Made by a program: the position numbers and the translations under genes
NCBI GenBank assembly: GCA_016748015.1
Contig: JAAOMT010000557.1
Span: forward strand, 295,548-359,547
Length of the DNA: 64,000 bases
Direction of reading: 5' to 3'
Source: Geosiphon pyriformis uo1
Taxonomy: Eukaryota > Fungi > Glomeromycota
Shown: piece after piece, positions 11,603 to 30,400 of the stretch
Position numbering within the stretch: the first letter of the stretch is position 1
Layout: the number at the start of each line of letters is the position of its first letter
Notes under the pieces: generated by a model
The model's database searches: none
Told to the model about the DNA's origin: nothing
What the model saw: the letters and a program-made list of their open reading frames with translations, nothing else

Positions 11603-12450
11603 CTAACGTTCTGCTAGGAATTTTTGTAAATCTTGTTCTGTTAATCAAGGAGATGACGTCAGATATTTGCATAATTCAAAACTTGAAAATAAGAATTGAA
11701 CTCACCAATACTCCAAACATGGGCTTTCAATTCAAGATGTTGTATATTCAAAGAATCCTTCAAATGTCAACATATAAAATGAATCAATTTCTTTATAAAA
11801 CTTAACAAAAAAGCAGAATCAAGGTTGAAAATATTCGAACAACTTACATATATTTTTTTTCCCTCATTCCTTAATTCCAACAATTGATCTTCGCTTGCAG
11901 CATAACTCTGCAACAATTTTAAATCTTCTTCAATCTTTTCAATCTTCTTAGCATAATCCCTCACCTTAAAATATCGGTCCAGCTTAACTGATCAATCACT
12001 CAATCACTCTTTTTAAAATGAAATGCGGAAGAGAAAGGTTTGATCTAAAATACCTTATTGGTAGATTGTTGTAGCTCTTCAACAGAACCCAGCAAAAGGT
12101 TGGATGCTGCATGATACTCGTCTAAAAGATAAATGTACCCGGCACCACTTGCAACTGTAAAACCGAGAAGAAATCCAATGATACTGTGTCAAAAAAAGAT
12201 AAATTTTAGCACGAAATGAACCCAGTTCCCATACAAGAGAGACAAGAGTTATTGGAGTGCTTCAACGGAGTTACTCCAAGGCTCCCAACACTCACCCTCC
12301 TCGAAACCCACCTACTGGCTTTTTCGGAGTGGGTACTTGGTTTTCAGAGGTAATAGCTTGTGAGCGGTACGGCGTATTCGAGAATAGTCGTAAATTGCTT
12401 CGTGCGAGAATTCCAAGTTGACGAAACAAAGGACGAGGGAGGTTTTGCAT
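11603..12450 (-). CDS. Conserved fungal mitochondrial single-pass membrane/coiled-coil protein of unknown function
   Basis: Five exons: MQNLPRPLFRQLGILARSNLRLFS (presequence-like)...PKKPVGGFRG / IIGFLLGFTVASGAGYIYLLDEY..VEELQQSTNK / VRDYAKKIEKIEEDL.. / DSLNIQHLELKAHVWSI / EQDLQKFLAER*. GT-AG introns. Confidence 0.8.
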
Positions 12451-12672
12451 AGCGGCCAAGGTGAAATTTTTGTTGACATCAGAAGCTCGGAGATCCTGAC
12501 TGCCATCTGTAACTTAGTCTAACATAACAACAATGGATTTGGGTACCCAATCATATTTTGTACAATAACTGATGTACTTTCTTAACACATGCAACGTCTA
12601 TCACCATAATAAATCTTAACTTTTTAAGGGTTAAGCATTCTAATTTCATACCTTTCAAACGAAGATTGCACA

Positions 12673-14135
12673 ATGAGCGACAAACCTTCCACCTCCAAAC
12701 CACCAGAGGATGTATTACAGTTTCTTGACAGCCTTGACACATATAATCAAAAGAATAATTCTGCTGCTAATTTAACAGTTGGAAAAACAGCGAGCGGAAA
12801 CGAAGCGCCAAAGACAGTAGACGATCGAGCGACGGACACTCAATCTGTACTCGACTTTCTTGACCAATTTACACAAACTACTTCGTCCTCCACCGCAGAC
12901 CCAACTACTATTACAACTTCTCAAGTTTCCCCAGTGACCAACAAAATCATAAACGATGGTGGGCTAGTAAACGAGTCTTTAGAGAGCAAAGATCAAGCAA
13001 CTACTGGGGACCACGCAACAGAGCAACCTTCTCAGTCGCAGCAGCGATCTGGTTCTTGGTCCTGGGGTGGACTTCTTGCAACCGCCTCTACTGCTTATAA
13101 AACTGCTACGACAGTCGTTGATACCTCTGTTAAAGGAGCGTTAGCCACTGTCGAAACAGTTCGAGTTAATGAGAGCACCAAAAAATTTGAGGAAAGAGTT
13201 CGTGGATACGTAAATAAAGAAACAATTGGCAAAATTGGTAGATTTATCTTTTTTTTTTCTCAAGAAATGCTGCTTAGCAAAAAGCCTTCACTTCGAGTAA
13301 TATAAATTGAAACACACAAAATAGGTGCTGATCTGAAAACGCTCAGTTTAAGCACTATAAATACAGTAGTTAATGCTGTAGCTCCACCAATTGCTGAGCA
13401 TGAGGTGGTGGAAGTATGGTTGGCCCATGATATGGTTGGTTATATTGGCGTGGAATCTCTTGTATATCGTGCATTTATGAAAGTCATGGAACAAGTGGAA
13501 GGTGGGGATATTGTCATGCGAAAAGGCAATGAATCGAAAAGAAGAGACTCAGATGCTGGTACCTATCGAGACCTAAATTTTTGTGAAGGCTTTGTTGAGG
13601 CAGTAGGACTTGCGACGGTAAATCGATGAAATTTAATAATGTATAAAGAAATATTTGCTTATACAACTTCTCATTTTAGGCTACAATAGAACAAATTATC
13701 AAAGAAAATTATACTCCATCACAAAAAGAAAAAGAAAAGAGAAATGACTCAGAAGCGTCCTCTTTGGATAATGTGGTGACCACATGTCCTGTGTTTATGT
13801 CAATTCAACCAACCAAAGCAAATCCATATAATTTACCGTCTATATCCGATGAGCCAGGGACTGCTAATCATAATCTTGATCCCGACAAATATTTGTTCTA
13901 TGTGATTGTTCTCGCTGATCCAACTCACAAACTTAATTTTAAAACGTTCTCACAATCACTTCCGATTAGTTGGCTAGATATTCCATATGAGGAGAATGAA
14001 TGGGTTGAAGAAAAAATGGTGGAATCATTAAAACTAGCGGTGCAAGCAATCGCCCAGGATTATGTTTGGGCTCGGATGACTGGGGACGGAAAACATCCTC
14101 CACCACGAGTTGAAGTACCCATTATTCATGTATGA
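12673..14135 (+). CDS. MTC1: Maintenance of telomere capping protein 1 homologue (3 exons)
   Basis: EDVLQFLDSL N-terminus, WSWGGLLATAS motif, VWLAHDMVGY..VESLVYRAFMKVMEQVEGG, and C-terminal TFSQSLP..W...EWVEE..SLKLAVQAIAQDYV..RM. Confidence 0.85.
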
Positions 14136-14689
14136 AGAAAGAACGGCTTGCGCATAAGAATTTGCAGAAACTGTTTTTTTTTCGATTTGACAAAATTTAC
14201 ATTATATATTAGTTTTATATTAAAATAATTTAAGTATTTTCATTAAATAAATATTTTATATTACAGAAATTTTAATAGAAAAAGTACAAGACTATATATC
14301 TATCTATTCACTTTTTATAAATACACGGGCAGATTCAAAGAATTGGTGAAGTGACAAAATGAAAATCATGACCGTTCAAGTTTTTATCTAATCAATTCTG
14401 GTGTGAAGGGAAGTTTTTGATGAATTTGATTTCTTCACAGTTTGACGCTTGGGTTCATCTTAATTACTGGATTTAGTGCGAAAGAACAGGGTTCGTTTCG
14501 ATTTTGATAAAAATGCTAAATTAGTTGCAATTTTGTTTTATGATTGTGACTAAGCGGGGATGACGACCAACTTTGGCGTGTAGTTGAATTATTTTAAAAC
14601 AAAGTTCTTATATCCATCGTTTGCGTTGAAACATGTTCACATTTTAGGAAGCAAAATTCGACCTTGGGTTTGAGCTTGATATCAACCAG

Positions 14690-16569
14690 CTATTGATTCT
14701 TTTTCCCTTCCCGTCTTTGAAGATCTTCGTAAGCTGCTAAAGCGACAGCCTTCTCATATTCATCAACACATAACAAATCTTTTGCACTATAAGTCAACCC
14801 GTATCCAGTTTCCGGAGGACAATCAGAAACTCGAAATTGTAATTCTTGACCACGTTCAACTAATATCTCGCCAGTTACCAATTTGCCCCACAAGTCGAGC
14901 ACTGGCAAATCATTATAATCTGCCAATCTTTCATTAGGTAACTCTTTAACAATAATATAACTGTCAATAAGTGGTATTTCGAAAGGGTGAGGTGATTTTT
15001 GTCTTTGCTGATGAATATGCATTCCGTATTCTGCATGATTTGTTGACAGACTTGCAAAATTATTAAAATTCGGATATAGCATGACGTATCCACGGAGGTA
15101 AACAAGTTCGATAAAAAATCGTTTCCATGAATTCTTCCAACGATTTGATCGACTATCGGGAACAGTGATATTTTGTAACTTGATAGTTTTTATGTCTTGC
15201 ATACGTCCTGTCAAGTATTCATGAAATTCGCGCCAGATCTCCGGAAAATAAACAGCACCCCAACTGCACGGCACTTGGGTGAGATATGGAGAATGTTCGT
15301 GAATTTGGGCCATTTTAAGTATCGATGACGGATCAAATTTTTTGCGACCAGTAATATTTAGTTCCAAATGATTAGGACTATATAAGCTTACGCCAAACAT
15401 TCGTTTGCTTGATGAACGATCGGAGCCGTATCGATATTTCAATACGTTATATTTTATCCAAATATAAAAAAATGGTGAAACCTCGACATCATCCTCTAAA
15501 AGGACGGCATATTCATCTTCATTAGCAGGATAAAAAGATTCTACAATAGCAGGTAACAGACCACCCTGTTGTACCCGATGTCGAAGAGTCACTGGGCCAA
15601 AACGCCATTTAAATTTCTGAGCGTAGTCAATCGTGATAGGATCAGCACCTTGATCCATATTTATCGTGAGTGGTATTTCATCACCAAGAGAATAGGAAGA
15701 TTCAAGCGACCGTAGTAAACGTGAAAAAGAATCAGGTCGATCCTGGGTGATAATTTGGATATAGATTTTTGGTGTATTCCAGTCTATAAATATTGAAGAT
15801 AATGTTAAAAAATTAGCCAAAGTAGACTAATTTTCATTAAAAAAAAAAAAAAAAAGAGCCTACATTTCAACGTGTCTATTGTAAGATTTGGTAACCAATC
15901 TAAATATTCAATTTCGTTCAAATGCACTCCTATTCCAGTTACATCTACAGAATCAGATATTGCAGCAACTAAACCACGTGTTGCAGAATTTCGAAAATCT
16001 TTGACGTAAAAGACAATTTCTGGTTTTAATCGACCTAATATTAGGAGCATTTCCTGGAAAACTTTTGATAAAGTATTCACGTAATCTTCGGATGACCAAG
16101 TAAATCTGCTAGAATGACCGACGTCCAAGTCAAAAATAGTAAGAGAACAATTATGAAATTGACTTTGATTAATCAATTCTGTCATTTCTGTTCCACTCAT
16201 TCCTCGTTGACTGCCAGTAACGACAACATTAAGGGAAAGAGAACGGTCCGACTGTTTTGCAAATTTGCAAAAAATTGGGTGCAAAAGTTTTGCTTGTTGA
16301 CTTCCGTCAACAAACACTAGAAATTTTTGTGTAGTGCTAGATGCGTCGAATTCGTGACTGGCTCGAGATTTTAAGGGTTGAAGGGTACTTTGACCTCCAA
16401 ATATATAAAAAGTTGTCGAGAAGATGAGGAAAATAGTGAGCAGTGCCGAAAGGTTGCGCAATAGTCTTGAAAAAGGAGCAGAACGCATTGCTGAAAACTT
16501 TTTTCCAACACGTTTGTGTATAGGAATGTGAGGGGAGAATAAACTTTGTCCTTCTTCGTAATGAAGCAT
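14690..16569 (-). CDS. Type II membrane GT-A fold glycosyltransferase (GT2-like), 2 exons
   Basis: Exon 16569-15864 carries an N-terminal TM anchor. Exon 15783-14690 carries IITQDRPDSFSRLLRSL, LLEDDVEVSPFFY (DXD-like) and QVPCSWGAVYFP. Confidence 0.88.
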
Positions 16570-18955: not shown

Positions 18956-19151
18956 AAAGTCTTTCAAACTCTATGAAACAATTTCAAAAAAAAAGTGGTA
19001 CATTTCAAAATGTTAAATGAACATAATTCTTATAAATATTTGGTTTCTGGTAAAACTAAAATGATAATATACTATTCCAATTTATTTTGAACCCTGATGA
19101 TCTGCAGATAAATCTCCGTTAACTCTTCGCTGATCACGCTCGAATTTGACA

Positions 19152-19160
19152 ATGAGTCAT
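19152..19160. promoter_or_regulatory. Perfect Gcn4/AP-1-type bZIP site
   Basis: ATGAGTCAT about 75 bp upstream of the Pol X start. Confidence 0.4.
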
Positions 19161-19233
19161 TGTTTCACTAAAAGGACAAGTCAGTGAACCCACAAAGTTT
19201 AGAACGGATGCTTTGAATTTTTCAAATCTCGTG

Positions 19234-21499
19234 ATGATGCGTCAACCGAAACAAGTCGTTTTGAGCTTCAAGCACCAAAACCAAAGTCACTTCTCAACCT
19301 TGACTTTGCGTCCCTATTCCCCCTCTCTCAAAAAAACACTGTACAGCCACTCACACAAGCGAGCTAGCTTTTCAAGTTTCATTGTAACTATAGAAAGTCC
19401 CAAGTTGTTTTTACTTGCGCCGACCATTCAAGGGCCTTTACGCAAGAACACACGACTTTCCCGCGTTAAACCCACTTTTTCAACAAACACTGCTAACTTG
19501 CGTTTCAGCGTGAAGGATGCAAGCGCTCCAGTCCCTAAATTGTTGGAAAAGAAAAAAAACAAAACAGAAAAAATAGTGCTTTCAAAGTCTGAGGCACCCC
19601 CTCAAAATTTGAACTCCAACATAACAAAAATACTTGAAGGTTTAAGGAAGACTCTCTTGCTTGAGGATTCTTATCTTCAATTTATTATAATTATAATTTT
19701 ATGTTACAGTATTGGCTCGTAAAGAAAGAGATAACGTATACAAGGAACGAGTATATTTCAACGCGATTCGTTCAATATCATTATATCCTCAGAAACTCGC
19801 ATCGGGAGAAGAAGCAAAACGAATAAAAGGAATAGGAGACAGTATTGCTCAAACCATTGATGAAATCTTGAAAACAGTATGTAGTTGAAATGAATTTATA
19901 ACTCTATAATTGAAAAGATCAAAAGTATGTGATCTTTGGGGCAATTAATAGTCAAAATTTTCATTTTTACCATTTCATTAAGGGTACATGCAAAAAATTA
20001 ACAGAGGAAATCGGTCCAGAAGATGAGTTGCAGAATTTGGTCACTCAAGTTCATGGAATTGGGTGCGCCGCTTCCTCCTTTAAAATTTGGAATCCGTATT
20101 ATGGAAATTATTGAGATTAAAGCAATTTCTTGGAGATGTCTCATTTATTATGTTTAATATTTTACTTTGAAAGGCCAGTATCCGCCCAGAGATTGATTGA
20201 AAAAGGATGCAAATCAATTGATGATGTTGCTAAAGATCCTGATTTAACGTCCAAGCAGCGAATAGGAATCAAGTATTTTAACGATTTGGCAACCGAAATT
20301 CCTCGTCAAGAGATGGTCGCACTGGAAGTAATAAATGGTTTTTTGTGCAATTTGTTTTTATTTCGTGATTATTTTTCCTGATTTCAGATTATTTGCTAAT
20401 TATGGCATATTACAAAAGGGATACATAATCGGAGCGTTACAAAAATTAGACGAAAAATATATTGCGACCATTTGTGGAAACTTGTAGGTATTTTTTTTAT
20501 AAATTGGGTCAAAATTATCATGATATATTTAATTTTTTCTTTTTTCCCGTTTTAATTAGTCGGCTAGGCTTTCAAATGTCCCGTGATATAGATCTCTTAG
20601 TCTCCCACTATGACTATATAAGTTCGCTCCAACCTAAACCAGGAGAACTACTTCAGAAAATTGCCAATAATCTTGAAGAAAAACAATTTATCAAAGATCA
20701 TATTAGTATAGGACCGCTTAAATACATGGTAAATTTTTATTCTCGAATTCATAAATAATAATTAAACTCGGGAACTTACCCAATATACCTAGGGAATATG
20801 CCGACTTTCAAACGACACGAGTTATTTGCACCGACGAATTAACATGCGGTATTTTATAACAGTTTACCCATTTCCAATTACTTGAAAATGTATAGGTCAA
20901 TTGAGTGATATTTCAACATGTCTCTCGATTTCAGATTAGTACCTTACGATCGCTACTGGCTTGCTGTGTTCACCCTCACAGGTGATGATGAGTTCATCAG
21001 ATATACTCGATCTCGTGCCATTAAAAACGGCCTTAATATGAATGAATACATCCTGGCACCTAAAGATCCCGCGACTGGCGAATTAGGAGAACCTCTCGAG
21101 ATAAAGAATGAGGAAGATATATTCAAAATGATTGGAATGAAATATTTACCACCCGAAGATCGGTGTTGGAACCCGGTAAAAAGGGAATTAAAGAAGGGAC
21201 AACCATTAAGCGTAGATTGGTGGAGAAATCTATCCAGCCAAACTTCAGATCGATCTCGATGGGCTGAAAAGACCACGGATACAAGTCGGCAAAAGCAGTC
21301 ATTCATTTCAAGATCTTTGTTTGGAAAAGAATTAACGAGTCAAACCCAAACAGGAACGGTAGTGAATAACAGTAACATGATACTAAAGGAAGAAATTAAG
21401 CAAGAAATTAAGCAAGATGTTCCAAAAAGTAGACCACTATTATTTGAAGTTACAAAGCGCATATTCAAATGGCCTTGGCCGACAGAAAAAAGGGCTTGA
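19234..21499 (+). CDS. Family X DNA polymerase (Pol beta-like, no BRCT), predicted catalytically impaired, with presequence-like N-terminus
   Basis: Eight exons join in frame: NLNSNITKILE/VLARKE..KERVYFNAIRSI..EEAKRIKGIGDSIAQTIDEILKT/G..VHGIG/PVSAQRL..QRIGIKYFNDL..IPRQEM../ATICGNF/RLGFQMSRDIDLLVSH..KYM/GICRL..HRRINMR/LVPYDRYWLAVFTLTGDDEFIRYTRSRA..MNEY..EEDIFKMIGMKYLPPEDR. Colinear with Pol beta. Start ATG at 19234 or 19237. Confidence 0.9.
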
Positions 21500-21773
21500 A
21501 GGTGAACCAATGCGATAACTAGATATTGCAAGAAATACAGAATGCACTGCTTCGATCAGAGGGCTGGATGTCTAAAAGTTCCAACGAGGGGGATTTTGAG
21601 AGATTGTTTATACCAATTTATTTAACTTTTCGTCCAACCTTTGGCATTTCATTAGCGAGTAGATTATTTTCTAGACTGATATGATAGTTTTAATACTGAT
21701 TGGCCTTTATCATTTCAACTCGTCTGTGTAAAATTATAAAACAAAAGAGTTTAGCCCACAAAGCAAAGCTCAG

Positions 21774-22130
21774 TCATATGGTGTGTTTCACTTCAGCCTT
21801 TAATTTTGTCACCTCCTGCTCCAGCCGAAGCAGTTCGCTTTCTTTTTGTTCTACATATTCTTTATAGTCCAATTTATACCACAAGAAATGCAGAGCAACA
21901 TAAGTACTCGAACTCCATAAGAAAAAATTTGTAATTGGTGTTCCAAAGGTTTGCCAAAAAGTGAGCCTCTTTTGGTTGGAACTGAAGGGGGGTGAAGTTG
22001 GCGGAGTGGTTGTTGAACTTCGTCTTAAAGTAAGCATAATTGGCCCTGGTTCAGCACCCAAGGAAAAAGACGTGTTTATGCTCGACCCAAGGTCAAGTTT
22101 TGCCTTGAAGAGTCGAGAGACCCGAAACAT
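21774..22130 (-). CDS. Small mitochondrial inner-membrane protein, Ina17-like
   Basis: 118 aa single exon: basic presequence, FGTPITNFFLWSSSTYVALHFLWYKL TM segment, then coiled coil EQKESELLRLEQEV. Resembles INAC subunit Ina17 as recalled, not searched. Confidence 0.7.
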   Translation of the reverse strand: MFRVSRLFKAKLDLGSSINTSFSLGAEPGPIMLTLRRSSTTTPPTSPPFSSNQKRLTFWQTFGTPITNFFLWSSSTYVALHFLWYKLDYKEYVEQKESELLRLEQEVTKLKAEVKHTI

Positions 22131-26673: not shown

Positions 26674-27464
26674 TCAAAAAAGATATGATAGGGCCAAACT
26701 AAAAGCACCAAAAACTAATCCAGCAAAAGCTGACGAAGAGATCTTTTGAATGGATGCAGCTGAAACTATAGGCGCTTTAGTAGTAGGTGAGCTGGAAGGC
26801 GAAGTTGAAGAGGTTGAGGATGCTGAATTTTCTGTTTTTGAACCAGAAGGATCACTACTCTTAGATGATGTACTATTATCAGATGAGGGTGATGACAGAG
26901 AGGAGGGTGAGTTGGTAGTATCCGCTGAGGTTGTGGAGTCAGGGTCGCTTTGGGGTTTGCTAGGATCGAATCCTTTCACAGTACCAGAAATTCCTTGGAT
27001 GCTAAAACGACCAGAATAGTAGCTTGATTTTCCATCAGAGTATCTGAGGAAGCTAAAAGAAGATTGTTTAAAATTTTTTGTTAAATTCAGCTCATATGTT
27101 CAATTAGGAAAATTTATGACGCATTTCAATATGACCATCTCTGAATAGCAAAGACTTACTAGAATTTTCCTGGAGGTCCCAAATTCTTTTTCACCTTATA
27201 TTCCTGTTTTCCGGCGGTAGCTTTAACGCTTTTTACAATTGTATCAACAATAACTTGTTGGGTATTTCCAGTCATTAAAAAAATGGAAACATCACCCATA
27301 TCTTTAAGTGATGGTTTTTTTCCATTATCATTCCAAGTTATAATTACAGTAGTATCTGCTTGCCAAGTGATACTATCATAAGGAGAGGTAGTGAAAATAG
27401 ACGCGTTTATTGTATTGCTAGCAATGAAGCTAGCTGCAAGAAGGAAAGAAGTTGTGAATTTCAT
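26674..27464 (-). CDS. Ser/Thr-rich GPI-anchored cell wall protein (Kre9/Knh1-like N-terminal domain), 2 exons
   Basis: Signal peptide MKFTTSFLLAASFIAS, TSP....W......ITW.D, YKVKKNLGPPGK/..FLRYSDGKSSYYSGRFSI, Ser/Thr stalk, SAA omega-like site and hydrophobic tail. Confidence 0.9.
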
Positions 27465-30400
27465 TTTTTGGAAATTTGACTTTCAAAGCAAATTTTAAGG
27501 GTCGAGATTTATGATTTTAAATAAAAGTAAAGGTAAAATGTTTGTGATTTTTAGGTAAAAATATAGGGTAGAGAGAGTGAAGAAAAGAATTTAAAATTAG
27601 TGGCTTTCCTAATCAAAGGAAGTTGGAAATAAGGAGTTAGTGGTTGGTTTTAATGTTAAAAGAAAGGGAAAAAGAAATAAAGAAATAAAGAAGGAAAGAA
27701 GAAGATAATTCATTTTTCGAATAAAGGTTTCGGGGCATATTTATATCATGTATTAAATTGGGAACGAATTTTCATTATCTGCCAATTAATGATCCCACTC
27801 GTGACATTTCGTGTTAGAAAATCTTTCACATTTGTGGTCATTTAGGAGGTTTGGCAATTATCCTTATTCCCTTCTCGGGCGTACCATGCATGATTGATAT
27901 GATAAATGAGAGAGTACGGTACTAATCTTTATAATTACTCAACATTTTTTTTCGTCATTTTATCTCAACTTTTTGTTATTTCATTGTACAATATAAATAA
28001 AAATATTTTTTAATTCATAATAAAATATTAAGTTTATTATTTTTATAAAGAAATTTTGTATATATATATGTATTCATTGGTATAAAAACTTCAAAAAAGT
28101 TTTGTAGATATACAAAAGAGAAAAGAAAGCGAAAGAGGAAAAAGATTTCCATCCCTCATCCTTATGAATCTTGTTAAATGATGTAATATTCCCTCATCAG
28201 AATTTAAGAAATAATTTAAAGTGCATTAAAAAGCTTGAAAATTAATTGATCAAAGTAATCTACAGTTGGAGAAACGTTGAATTAAAAAGATTTGTGTTTT
28301 GATTATATTATTTGCATAATACTCATTAACATCCTATTATTTGCATAATACTTATTGAAATCCTATTAATTAGTGCAATGGGTTGATGCGCATAGTAAAC
28401 ACCCATCCTAAAAACCTTCCTCATTAAATGATTGGCATCGCGGCCGATATTATGGAAAAATCCCCGAAACATTAGTATAACAGGGGTACTGGAAAAAGAA
28501 AAATAGGTAATTACGGATCAACCAATGTTGACAAACAAGATAGACAGGTGGTGTTTTGTGCACTTTTTCTAAACTTGAGTTTATGTAATTTATCACCTAA
28601 ATGTAGATTAAAGGAATGTTCTTGGCATTTATAATTGCAACATAAGATGTGACGTTTTACTTTTAAATTTTATTTCAATTGTTATATTTATCAGTTATAG
28701 GTTCATTTTCAGGCATGTTCCTCAGATAACCTTTTTTGGCAAAGAAAAATTTGTTGTCAATTTTCGTTTAACCCACATGATTTCATGTGATTTAAACATT
28801 TAATCTTGAAAAAATAATTGAATTTTAAGAATTTTTTATTGTTTAATTCAAATTGATTCTTTAATTCATTGGAAATTATTTTATAAAAGCTTAGTTTGTT
28901 TATAATATAGTTACTCTTTTTTATTACTTAAAAAATTATTTTTTTTGGATATTAAAAAATAACATGATTATTTTTAAAAACAGAAATACTTTCAATTAAA
29001 TACAATAAGACAAAAATTTATTAATGAAAAACATGGATATTTAGGTTTCAAGATTTATTTTTTATAAATAACACACAAATAAATTTATTTGCAGCAAATA
29101 TTTTTCTTGTAACTTCATAGTTTTGTTATTATTAAATTAAATTTGTACTCTTGTAAAATTTTGATTTGTTATGATAAATATTTTTTGGGTCAATATTTTA
29201 ATGTATAAAAACTTTAACTATTTAGTTTAAAAGGTGACATCTTTTTTATGATCAAAAGATTAATAAAAAGACATAATTGTATTTAGATTATTTATTTTTC
29301 TTAATTATTAAAAAGGATAACAATTAATCTTTTTTAATTAGAAAAAGCCATCATATTTTTCTAGAAATTTCTTTAAAAATTTTTCTTAATTTTACTTGAA
29401 CAAATAAACATCAAATTGTAATTTGGTTTTCATTTTCAAAGAATATAGTAATCAAGTATTTCTCGATTATTTTCAATTTTTCAAGTTAATAAGGAAAATT
29501 TTGTATCAAAAATATTTATTCTATATTTTTAACAATAAATACTAATTAATAAAACAATGATCAAATATAATTTTTCATGTAAAAAAAAGAAACTATTTAA
29601 AATTATTGTTATTTATCAAAAAAAAAAAAAAAACTGCAAAATTTTTTATTTATTATCACTTATTATTATTATTATTCAAACCTAGTTTAATGAATTAACA
29701 TAAATTTACATTTATAAAAATTTTAAAATAAATTGATAAAATTCAAGAATTCATAATTTTATATTGCTTCTTTTATATATATGTATAAATGGTTTTAGTT
29801 CTTGAAAATAATATCTTGATTACAAAATTTATTTTTTTAATCTTTTTTTTAAATAAACATATAATCATTTTAGTATTTAAATAATTTTAAAATAATTTCA
29901 TTACCAAAACTATTAAACCAATTTTATATTAAAAATTTATTTTCATTTAACCAAAAAAATTTTTTTTTTTTTTGAAATATTAAATTGTATTAATTGCAAC
30001 AATTATATTTTGATTAAAAAATTATTATTATTATTTGTTAAATTTGGATTTTATTAAAATATTTAATTCAATTTGATAATCTGTACAAATATATTTTTTT
30101 TTTCATTATACCAATTTCACGACTAGAATATCTTTTCTTTAAAAAAAACATAAATGTGAGCTCTTTGATCAAGTAAAATTGTTTCATAATTGAATATAAA
30201 ACAGACAACAAAAAATTGGAAACACTACACTTATTTATTTACATATTTGTTTTGATCATTGTGTATTTAAATATGTTGCGTAATTATGGTGCAAAATTTT
30301 TCATTTATGAATGTTAAAAATATTGTACCACAAAAACAAAAAACATTAATAAAAATTTCTTAAAAAGTTACAAATAAACTGTAACAAGCTTGTATATTAA

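What the first reader, a model, noticed from the sequence alone, without database searches (positions are those of the whole stretch)
19234..21499. Intact Pol beta-like gene with both catalytic sites disabled: candidate pseudo-polymerase X
Seen: the exons splice into one clean frame that aligns locally without gaps to Pol beta motifs, but key residues differ (human Pol beta numbering). Third catalytic Asp256 is Asn (HRRINMR for HRRIDIR; AAC at 20841-20843). Triphosphate-binding GSFRRG reads GNFRLG (S180N, R183L) and G189 is Arg. The YFTGS motif reads TLTGD and N279 is Ile. The dRP-lyase Schiff-base Lys72 is Thr (ACC at 19853-19855) and K68 is Ser. Both HhH GIG motifs, D190/D192, R283 and the thumb (NEY, EEDIF, PEDR) are kept. 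Established: D256 and K72 are each required for the respective Pol beta activity. Inference: losses concentrate on chemistry residues while DNA-binding elements, splice sites and CpGs are preserved, which suggests a selected non-catalytic gap/nick-binding or scaffold protein rather than random decay.
Basis: partly seen in the sequence, partly recalled or inferred. Interest (0 to 1): 0.85.

Follow-up and report, generated by a model that had tools for sequence, protein, structure and literature searches.

The report
Catalytically dead Pol beta in Geosiphon
The fungus Geosiphon pyriformis keeps an intact, transcribed copy of the DNA-repair polymerase beta gene whose polymerase and lyase active-site residues are replaced while the rest of the protein is preserved, and its relatives in the arbuscular mycorrhizal fungi disabled the same gene independently and have kept it under selection, so this looks like a repair enzyme turned into a non-catalytic DNA-binding protein.

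Summary
Window 19234-21499 (+) is an eight-exon gene of Geosiphon pyriformis. It is identical to public protein KAG9292245.1 (553 aa, "hypothetical"). Residues 116-442 align end to end with Pol beta (E 1.5e-76).

It carries D256N, S180N, R183L, N279I, G189R and K72T. Contigs from another sequencing run show the same codons with no differences and confirm introns 2-5.

New context:
- The sister genus Ambispora has the orthologue at the syntenic locus with every catalytic residue intact, so the loss is specific to Geosiphon.
- Diversispora, Funneliformis and Rhizophagus orthologues lost D190, D192 and D256 independently. They still evolve under purifying selection (core dN/dS 0.24-0.54, upper bounds below 1).
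- In Geosiphon, 4 of the 5 losses among 43 near-invariant columns hit the 11 chemistry columns (P = 0.011).
- Drift long enough to explain that would have broken the reading frame (P < 1/4000).
- The genome holds only one other Pol X, a canonical BRCT-bearing enzyme.

Best reading (about 0.6): a maintained non-catalytic Pol beta, probably organelle-targeted. Its function, its localisation and the selection on the Geosiphon branch itself are untested. I found no description of eukaryotic dead Pol X proteins in the literature searched.

The parts
19234..21499 (+). Whole gene (ATG to TGA), 8 exons and 7 GT..AG introns. It encodes the 553-aa protein KAG9292245.1.
   Evidence: exact spliced mapping to P0001. 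(identity and name).
19234..19578 (+). N-terminal extension, residues 1-115. There is no BRCT domain. The first 53 residues have no Asp or Glu, the first 40 hold 6 Arg/Lys, and the stretch is Ser/Thr-rich. This is presequence-like.
   Evidence: composition. The N-terminus MxRQPxQxVLxFK is conserved with Ambispora. The run X1 contig covers 19263-19625.
19579..21169 (+). Pol beta core, residues 116-444: 8-kDa/HhH domain, fingers, palm and thumb, interrupted by introns 1-7.
   Evidence: E 1.5e-76 to Pol beta 1-333. (four Pfam domains). (AlphaFold2 pLDDT 92.7). (Foldseek TM 0.78-0.89 to human and rat Pol beta).
19853..19855 (+). ACC = Thr184 at the position of the dRP-lyase nucleophile Lys72.
   Evidence: Lys is present in Ambispora and in Diversispora epigaea, Funneliformis and Rhizophagus (the partial D. 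eburnea model has a gap there).
20479..20481 (+). AAC = Asn290 at Ser180 (triphosphate contact).
20564..20566 (+). CTA = Leu293 at Arg183 (triphosphate contact).
20582..20593 (+). CGT GAT ATA GAT = Arg299-Asp300-Ile301-Asp302. This is G189R followed by the retained metal ligands D190 and D192.
20841..20843 (+). AAC = Asn364 at the third catalytic Asp256.
   Evidence: The run X1 contig piece 20780-21057 shows no differences.
20996..20998 (+). ATC = Ile387 at Asn279 (minor-groove contact to the incoming nucleotide).
21170..21496 (+). C-terminal extension, residues 445-553. It diverges fast, but the frame is kept through to the conserved end motif.
21452..21478 (+). C-terminal motif TKRIFKWPW, identical in both Ambispora orthologues and absent from the orthologues of the other arbuscular mycorrhizal fungi.

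Best explanation
The gene encodes a Pol beta-type family X protein. It keeps the whole fold and the DNA-binding elements but can no longer bind dNTP, catalyse nucleotidyl transfer or form the dRP-lyase Schiff base.

Shown:
- Intact frame, canonical splice sites, transcription, and coding-type base composition.
- Replacement of D256, S180, R183, G189, N279 and K72.
- Retention of both helix-hairpin-helix motifs, of K35, K60 and K84 in the 5'-phosphate pocket, and of R254, R258, R283, E295 and Y296.
- Orthology with a catalytically intact Ambispora gene.
- An independent and older inactivation of the same gene in the Diversisporales and Glomerales, where it stays under purifying selection.

Inferred:
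- The Geosiphon protein is also maintained by selection.
- It binds gapped or nicked DNA ends without processing them, acting as a sensor, protector or assembly platform.
- It works in mitochondria, because every fungal orthologue carries a presequence-like N-terminal extension instead of a BRCT domain.
- It recruits a partner through the conserved C-terminal motif TKRIFKWPW.
For: 1. Identity and substitutions. An independent run's contigs show the same codons, and introns 2-5 are spliced.

2. Losses are concentrated. 38 of 43 columns that are at least 90% conserved in active enzymes are kept. Four of the five losses lie in the 11 polymerase-chemistry columns (hypergeometric P = 0.011; Fisher 0.036 if D256 is set aside as the first hit). 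The fifth is a conservative L125V.

3. Neutral drift cannot give both patterns.
- Replacing about 36% of free residues needs a divergence of about 0.2 per nucleotide. At that level no simulated copy of 4000 kept the 553-codon frame, and the 14 splice dinucleotides survive with P = 0.002.
- At 0.013 per nucleotide, which fits the 1 of 32 other columns, only about 0.3 hits are expected in the 11 chemistry columns, against 4 seen (Poisson about 4e-4).

4. Composition. Exon GC is 39.8% and CpG observed/expected is 1.0. Introns and the window have 26-27% GC and CpG o/e 0.77-0.78. The Ambispora coding sequence has the same GC.

5. The N- and C-terminal motifs are conserved with Ambispora across fast-evolving linkers.

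6. The fold is predicted with confidence (pLDDT 92.7; TM 0.78-0.89 to Pol beta).

7. Precedent in the same orthologous group. Diversispora, Funneliformis and Rhizophagus proteins have D190E/S, D192N/Q and D256E. Their core dN/dS is 0.34 [0.22-0.51], 0.54 [0.35-0.87], 0.38 [0.27-0.54] and 0.24 [0.16-0.33].

8. Published non-catalytic roles. Dead Pol beta mutants are still recruited to damage and still restore XRCC1 turnover (PMC8607749). Pol lambda can act as a scaffold (PMC7898466).
Against: - The sister genus Ambispora is fully intact, so the loss is specific to one lineage and could be young.
- The Geosiphon branch is about twice as long as the Ambispora branch (0.54 against 0.26). By Tajima-type counts it is 36 against 19 (chi-square 5.25, P about 0.02). 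That fits relaxation as well as a change of function. I had no control genes to show that the speed-up is specific to this gene.
- dN/dS on the Geosiphon branch cannot be measured (dS about 3).
- RNA evidence comes from contigs only. In exons 6-8 the contig follows an antisense transcript, so sense splicing of introns 6 and 7 and the level of sense mRNA are unknown.
- The chemistry set was defined after seeing the data, and the samples are small.
- DNA binding, localisation and partners are untested.
Confidence: 0.6

Rival explanations
1. A dying gene. The polymerase was disabled recently in the Geosiphon lineage. The gene no longer has a function and has simply not yet picked up a stop or frameshift.
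For: The Ambispora orthologues are intact. The Geosiphon branch is about two-fold longer. An abundant antisense transcript covers exons 6-8, and sense splicing is unproven there. There is no measurable dN/dS.
Against: Six separate hits on residues invariant in active enzymes, against one conservative change in 32 other invariant columns, do not fit uniform relaxation. A drift time long enough for the former destroys the frame and the splice sites. Exon GC and CpG have not decayed towards the 27% background. The terminal motifs are kept.
Confidence: 0.22
2. Still an enzyme. The protein keeps weak or altered chemistry. Examples are nucleotidyl transfer with D190 and D192 plus another ligand, lyase activity through K35 or K84, or a different substrate.
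For: D190, D192, R254, R258, E295 and Y296 are kept, as are three of the five lysines of the 5'-phosphate pocket. K72A Pol beta keeps about 1% of its lyase activity (PMC8607749).
Against: D256A eliminates polymerase activity (PMC8607749, citing Menge 1995). Here S180, R183, G189 and N279 are lost as well, so the triphosphate site is dismantled. Both K68 and K72 are missing.
Confidence: 0.12
3. Artefact. An assembly or base-calling error, a wrong gene model, or an alternative exon or allele that restores Asp256 and Lys72.
For: Introns 1, 6 and 7 lack direct RNA junctions.
Against: Contigs of a separate run match all key codons with no differences. The model reproduces the public protein exactly. 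The intron positions and the lengths of exons 4-6 are the same in all seven genes mapped, and exon 7 is also the same length in Geosiphon and both Ambispora. No other frame in introns 6 and 7 encodes an RRxD exon. The genome holds no second Pol beta-type locus.
Confidence: 0.03

Closest known systems
Mammalian DNA polymerase beta (family X; PDB 1bpd, 1bpx and others)
   Same: The domain order is the same: 8-kDa HhH domain, fingers, palm, thumb. There is no BRCT domain. The alignment runs end to end with about 39-40% identity. Both GIG hairpins, D190, D192, R254, R258, R283, E295 and Y296 are kept.
   Different: D256N, S180N, R183L, G189R, N279I, K72T and K68S. There is a 115-aa N-terminal presequence-like extension and a 109-aa C-terminal extension with its own conserved motif.
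Ambispora gerdemannii and A. leptoticha orthologues (CAG8468729.1, CAG8449536.1)
   Same: Sister position in the tree (support 100/98). Same exon-intron structure. Syntenic neighbours. Same N-terminal and C-terminal motifs. K68S is shared by both, and Y271T/F272L with A. gerdemannii.
   Different: Ambispora keeps K72, S180, R183, D190, D192, D256, N279 and R283, so it is predicted to be active. Core dN/dS between the two species is 0.21.
Orthologues in Diversisporales and Glomerales (Rhizophagus irregularis 'Nucleotidyltransferase', R. clarus, Funneliformis spp., Diversispora spp.)
   Same: Same orthologous group with the same tail-to-tail INA17 neighbour. They have a presequence-like N-terminus and no BRCT domain. 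Their polymerase site is disabled, including D256 and N279, and they are under purifying selection.
   Different: The event was independent and hit different residues: D190S/E, D192N/Q, D256E, R283Q/V and G105R/D. S180 (except R in R. clarus), R183 and the lyase Lys72 are kept. They have no C-terminal motif and are much more diverged (29-31 of 43 conserved columns kept).
Noncanonical prokaryotic PolX (Prostova et al. 2022, PMC9226535)
   Same: Family X polymerases with substituted catalytic triads and degraded dNTP sites that are still conserved. That study showed biochemically that the polymerase activity is gone.
   Different: Those proteins keep an active PHP exonuclease domain and a conserved lyase domain, which explains why they are retained. 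Many also have deletions in the palm or fingers. The Geosiphon protein has no second catalytic domain, no deletions, and has lost the lyase lysine too.
Trypanosomatid mitochondrial Pol beta and Pol beta-PAK (PMC8375306)
   Same: Pol beta-type enzymes that work in an organelle rather than in the nucleus.
   Different: Those are active polymerases. Organelle targeting of the fungal proteins is only inferred here.

Membership tests
DNA polymerase family X, Pol beta subfamily (by descent) | Four-domain architecture: HHH_8 8-kDa domain, fingers, palm and thumb. | tested here: met
   Pfam PF14716 at 68.7 bits, PF10391 at 57.3, PF14792 at 84.7 and PF14791 at 56.7. All are above their cut-offs. Each exon also hits on its own.
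DNA polymerase family X, Pol beta subfamily (by descent) | Closer to Pol beta than to Pol lambda, Pol mu or TdT, and no BRCT domain. | tested here: met
   E 1.5e-76 to Pol beta against 2e-44 to Pol lambda. The thumb alone scores 4e-12 against 3e-5. The N-terminus has no BRCT hit.
DNA polymerase family X, Pol beta subfamily (by descent) | Pol beta fold. | tested here: met
   AlphaFold2 pLDDT 92.7 and pTM 0.79. Top Foldseek hits are human and rat Pol beta with TM 0.78-0.89. This is a prediction only.
Active Pol beta enzyme | Catalytic carboxylate triad D190, D192 and D256. | tested here: not met
   The triad reads D, D, N, with AAC at 20841-20843.
Active Pol beta enzyme | dNTP-binding residues S180, R183, G189 and N279. 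| tested here: not met
   They read N, L, R and I. S180, R183 and N279 are at least 90% conserved in the 15 active homologues compared; G189 is not in that set of conserved columns (Ser in Ambispora).
Active Pol beta enzyme | dRP-lyase nucleophile Lys72. | tested here: not met
   Thr, encoded by ACC at 19853-19855. K68 is Ser as well.
Active Pol beta enzyme | Gap-filling and lyase activity in vitro. | not testable with these tools
   This needs recombinant protein.
Pseudoenzyme (maintained non-catalytic homologue) | Catalytic residues lost while the fold is kept. | tested here: met
Pseudoenzyme (maintained non-catalytic homologue) | Purifying selection after the loss. | tested here: inconclusive
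   Indirect support in Geosiphon comes from the pattern test at P = 0.011, the intact frame against simulation, and exon composition. Direct dN/dS is saturated. The feature is met in the Diversisporales and Glomerales orthologues, with omega 0.24-0.54 and upper bounds below 1.
Pseudoenzyme (maintained non-catalytic homologue) | Expression. | tested here: inconclusive
   Spliced contigs cover exons 1-6 in the sense orientation (introns 2-5). The 3' exons are covered by an antisense isoform. The data are contigs only, and there is no protein evidence.
Noncanonical PolX in the sense of PMC9226535 | A PHP exonuclease domain that supplies the retained activity. | tested here: not met
   No PHP hit. 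The protein ends 109 residues after the thumb.

The most novel reading that the evidence does not exclude
Early-diverging fungi carry a vertically inherited Pol beta lineage with a presequence, and this lineage became a non-catalytic DNA-binding protein at least twice within the Glomeromycotina. One event lies in the common ancestor of the Diversisporales and Glomerales, where the dead form has been kept under selection ever since. The other occurred independently in Geosiphon. These would be the first natural eukaryotic pseudo-polymerases of family X. They would show that the Pol beta fold has a selectable role that needs neither of its two activities, for example sensing nicks or gaps or assembling repair complexes on organelle DNA.
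Probability: 0.45. Interest if true: 0.75.

Novelty: new variant of a known kind. Interest (0 to 1): 0.62.

Why it matters
- Pol beta is the textbook base-excision-repair polymerase. Its two activities are normally treated as its whole purpose. A natural, maintained version without either activity would give a clean system for studying the non-catalytic roles of Pol beta that mutant studies in human cells only hint at (PMC8607749).

- Multicellular fungi are usually said to lack Pol beta (PMC12828229). This work shows a Pol beta-type gene in chytrids, Endogonales and Glomeromycotina.

- Ambispora (intact), Geosiphon (recently disabled) and Rhizophagus, Funneliformis and Diversispora (long disabled) form a natural series. 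It allows direct biochemical comparison.

- If the proteins are mitochondrial, they bear on how these multinucleate symbionts maintain their organelle DNA.

Tried and rejected
- **A second, active Pol beta copy in the genome.** Searches with PF14792, PF14791 and the intact Ambispora protein found only the window gene and a BRCT-bearing Pol X on contig C702.
- **An alternative exon restoring HRRID.** None exists in any frame of introns 6 and 7.
- **dN/dS between Geosiphon and Ambispora.** dS is about 3, so it is saturated. The YN00 method failed.
- **Closer relatives in soil metagenomes.** Two scans returned only one 1-kb contig, the one behind P0005. It has the same INA17 neighbour but no exon 7.
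- **Control genes for the relative-rate test.** Whether the acceleration is gene-specific is therefore untested.
- **INA17 Pfam hit for the neighbouring ORF.** It failed at E <= 0.01. Homology was shown instead by BLASTP against the Rhizophagus neighbour.
- **Literature.** No paper was found on Pol beta in arbuscular mycorrhizal fungi or on eukaryotic dead Pol X proteins. This is only a negative result from the library held here.
- **Handling of the spliced model.** Exons were searched by reference. The full protein was used only through its database id P0001, or built inside local scripts from the stored files.
Full report
**What is there**

Window 19234-21499 on the + strand holds an eight-exon gene. 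I located the exons from three-frame translations. I then confirmed them with an exact spliced mapping.

- The exons are 19234-19639, 19710-19876, 19983-20062, 20174-20327, 20419-20483, 20560-20728, 20793-20848 and 20935-21499.
- All seven introns are GT..AG.
- A search with the last exon alone returned a 553-aa protein, P0001, that is 100% identical over that exon.
- P0001 is KAG9292245.1, "hypothetical protein G9A89_023965" of Geosiphon pyriformis.
- The spliced translation equals P0001 residue for residue.

**Family**

All four Pol beta domains score above their Pfam cut-offs. Residues 116-442 align to rat Pol beta 1-333 with E 1.5e-76, against 2e-44 for Pol lambda. There is no BRCT domain. 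An AlphaFold2 model of residues 110-450 has mean pLDDT 92.7. Its best Foldseek matches are human and rat Pol beta, with TM 0.78-0.89.

**The substitutions**

Reading the codons directly and using the alignment for numbering (table), the protein has:

| Pol beta residue | Geosiphon | Codon and position |
|---|---|---|
| K72 | Thr | ACC 19853-55 |
| S180 | Asn | AAC 20479-81 |
| R183 | Leu | CTA 20564-66 |
| G189 | Arg | CGT 20582-84 |
| D256 | Asn | AAC 20841-43 |
| N279 | Ile | ATC 20996-98 |

Retained are D190, D192, both GIG hairpins, K35, K60, K84, R254, R258, R283, E295 and Y296.

K68S is present in both catalytically intact Ambispora orthologues and in other fungi. S275D is present in both Ambispora species. 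Y271T/F272L (the TLTGD motif) is shared with A. gerdemannii, while A. leptoticha reads L/F. They are therefore ancestral to this group.

D256A is the standard polymerase-dead mutant. K72A leaves about 1% of lyase activity (PMC8607749).

**Is the sequence right?**

One public run, X1, holds the region as contigs. Laid on 19000-21800, its contigs match with zero differences over every key codon. They skip 19877-19982, 20063-20173, 20328-20418 and 20484-20559 with GT..AG ends, which are + strand introns 2-5. A second contig covers 19263-19625 inside exon 1.

From 20560 rightwards the same contig instead carries CT..AC joints at 20671/20780, 21057/21148, 21518/21614 and 21725/21815. These are introns of a minus-strand transcript. 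So the RNA evidence for exons 6-8 comes from an antisense isoform, and sense splicing of introns 1, 6 and 7 is not shown.

Those three introns are supported by comparison. All six orthologues that I mapped have introns at the same positions, and exons 4-6 have identical or near-identical lengths in all of them. No other frame within introns 6 and 7 encodes an alternative RRxD exon.

**Other Pol X genes**

Whole-genome searches with the palm and thumb families and with the intact Ambispora protein find only two loci. One is the window gene. The other is on contig C702. It has an N-terminal BRCT domain and intact GGYRRG...GDVDV and RQLDII motifs, so it is a canonical Pol4/lambda/mu-type enzyme. 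There is no second Pol beta-type copy.

**Relatives**

The representative and homologue searches recovered orthologues from these species (names):

- Ambispora gerdemannii and A. leptoticha
- Diversispora epigaea and D. eburnea
- Funneliformis mosseae, F. geosporum and F. caledonium
- Rhizophagus irregularis and R. clarus
- Jimgerdemannia (Endogonales)
- Spizellomyces (a chytrid)

A maximum-likelihood tree reproduces the species tree: (Spizellomyces,(Jimgerdemannia,((Geosiphon,(Ambispora x2)),(Diversispora,(Funneliformis,Rhizophagus))))). The Archaeosporales node has support 100/98 and the Diversisporales + Glomerales node 100/99.

Orthology of the Geosiphon and Ambispora genes is further supported by three things:

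- shared N-terminal (MxRQPxQxVLxFK) and C-terminal (TKRIFKWPW) motifs;
- identical exon structure;
- syntenic neighbours.

Multicellular fungi are usually said to lack Pol beta (PMC12828229). These early-diverging lineages do have a Pol beta-type gene.

**The key comparison**

- Both Ambispora proteins keep K72, S180, R183, D190, D192, D256, N279 and R283. The Geosiphon loss therefore happened after the split from Ambispora.
- All Diversispora, Funneliformis and Rhizophagus proteins have D190E/S, D192N/Q, D256E, N279Y and R283Q/V.
- All of them except the partial D. eburnea model, which lacks that stretch, also have a broken second hairpin (G105R/D) and keep K72.
- Geosiphon and that clade share only the loss of D256 and N279, with different replacement residues. 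Given the tree, these are two independent inactivations.
- The Diversisporales and Glomerales version is old and is maintained.

| Species pair | Core dN/dS | 95% bootstrap interval |
|---|---|---|
| R. irregularis / R. clarus | 0.34 | 0.22-0.51 |
| F. mosseae / F. geosporum | 0.54 | 0.35-0.87 |
| R. irregularis / F. geosporum | 0.38 | 0.27-0.54 |
| R. clarus / F. geosporum | 0.24 | 0.16-0.33 |
| Ambispora pair (active) | 0.21 | 0.14-0.31 |

So within this orthologous group a catalytically dead Pol beta is demonstrably kept by selection.

**Selection or decay in Geosiphon?**

Direct dN/dS against Ambispora is useless, because dS is about 3. Indirect tests are these.

- *Where the losses fall.* Forty-three columns are at least 90% conserved in 15 homologues with intact sites. 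Geosiphon keeps 38 of them. In a leave-one-out test most active proteins keep 89-100% (two distant outliers, P0026 and P0047, 78%), and the Diversisporales and Glomerales proteins keep 67-72%. Four of the five Geosiphon losses lie in the 11 polymerase-chemistry columns (P = 0.011). The fifth is L125V. Leaving D256 out as the presumed first hit still gives 3 of 10 against 1 of 32 (Fisher P = 0.036).
- *Simulated neutral mutation of the coding sequence.* A divergence that replaces about a third of free residues (about 0.2 per nucleotide) left no copy of 4000 without a stop, and leaves all 14 splice dinucleotides intact with P = 0.002. A divergence compatible with 1 of 32 (0.013) predicts about 0.3 hits in the chemistry columns where 4 are seen (Poisson about 4e-4).
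- *Base composition.* Exons have 39.8% GC and CpG observed/expected 1.0, like the Ambispora coding sequence. Introns and the whole window have 26-27% GC.
- *Reading frame.* The C-terminal motif is kept in frame behind a fast-evolving 100-residue linker.

Against this stand three points.

- The Geosiphon branch is twice as long as the Ambispora branch (0.54 against 0.26). Lineage-specific departures number 36 against 19, giving chi-square 5.25 and P about 0.02.
- I could not show that this acceleration is gene-specific.
- The chemistry set was defined after the fact, and the numbers are small.

**Mechanism proposed**

- *Shown:* an intact Pol beta scaffold without the catalytic-metal ligand and general base (D256), without the triphosphate contacts (S180, R183, G189), without the minor-groove check (N279) and without the lyase lysines (K68, K72).
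- *Inferred:* it still binds gapped or nicked DNA through the two hairpins, the remaining lysines of the 5'-phosphate pocket and R283, and it acts as a non-catalytic sensor or platform.
- *Localisation:* the N-terminal 115 residues are presequence-like. There is no acidic residue before position 54, and the first 40 residues hold 6 Arg/Lys and 10 Ser/Thr. Four of the six other fungal orthologues examined look similar; D. epigaea and Spizellomyces have an acidic residue early, at positions 4 and 16. It suggests a mitochondrial location but was not tested with a dedicated predictor.

Published precedents:

- prokaryotic noncanonical PolX proteins that lack polymerase activity but keep a PHP nuclease (PMC9226535);
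- enzymatically dead Pol beta that is still recruited to damage and still restores XRCC1 turnover (PMC8607749);
- a scaffold role for Pol lambda (PMC7898466).

**Novelty and verdict**

I found nothing on Pol beta in arbuscular mycorrhizal fungi, nor on eukaryotic dead Pol X proteins, in the library. I rate the finding a new variant of a known kind: a pseudo-polymerase of family X, but eukaryotic, stand-alone and lacking both activities.

Confidence in each reading:

| Reading | Confidence |
|---|---|
| Maintained non-catalytic protein | about 0.6 |
| Young dying gene | about 0.22 |
| Residual or altered enzyme | about 0.12 |
| Artefact | about 0.03 |

Noticed in passing
window 20560-21815, minus strand: A spliced antisense transcript runs through exons 6-8 of the Pol beta-like gene. 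The run X1 contig carries minus-strand introns at 20672-20779, 21058-21147, 21519-21613 and 21726-21814 (CT..AC on the + strand). It looks like a read-through isoform of the convergent downstream gene. Its last three introns lie behind the stop codon of that isoform. It may regulate the sense gene or may be noise.
   Followed up: partly
window 21774-22130, minus strand; L011 7940-8293; L012 8180-8524; L014 4562-4915; L015 506-799: The downstream convergent gene is a homologue of INA17, a mitochondrial inner-membrane assembly factor. It is 36% identical to the R. irregularis neighbour that carries PF28274 (E 1e-14). The tail-to-tail pair of Pol beta-like gene and INA17 is conserved from Geosiphon to Rhizophagus and Funneliformis and in a soil metagenome contig. 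The two stop codons lie only 95-275 nt apart.
   Followed up: partly
L011 6001-7845, L012 6001-8039, L013 890-2630, L014 2423-4460 (Rhizophagus and Funneliformis orthologues); proteins P0172 and P0009 (Diversispora): Every Diversisporales and Glomerales orthologue has two or three catalytic aspartates replaced (D190S/E, D192N/Q, D256E), and all but the partial P0009 model, which lacks that stretch, keep the lyase Lys72. Core dN/dS is 0.24-0.54. This is an old, conserved dead polymerase that might still be a dRP lyase. R. irregularis annotates it only as 'Nucleotidyltransferase'.
   Followed up: yes
G000:C702:1188380-1190700 (L001 53-2370): The only other Pol X gene of the genome has a BRCT domain and intact GGYRRG..GDVDV, RQLDII and GWTGS motifs. 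It is a canonical Pol4/lambda/mu-type enzyme.
   Followed up: partly
window 11810-16525 against L009 2290-7050: A three-gene block upstream of the Pol beta-like gene is inverted relative to Ambispora gerdemannii. The block holds a 163-aa protein, a DUF5427 gene and an SPBC1E8_03c_N-like gene. The Kre9/KNH gene downstream (window 26680-27470) is collinear.
   Followed up: no
proteins P0003, P0009 and P0166 (L010 10001-15125; L014 4156-4460): Three public gene models of orthologues contain artefacts. The A. leptoticha model is fused to an mRNA-capping enzyme. The D. eburnea model lacks part of the 8-kDa and fingers region and is fused to an EMG1-like tail. The F. mosseae model has a probably spurious last intron that replaces the end of the thumb.
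   Followed up: no
L015 60-371 (soil or rhizosphere metagenome contig Ga0157379_10633917): An unidentified relative has the same INA17 neighbour and Val at the N279 position. Exon 7, which holds the D256 position, is off the contig.
   Followed up: partly
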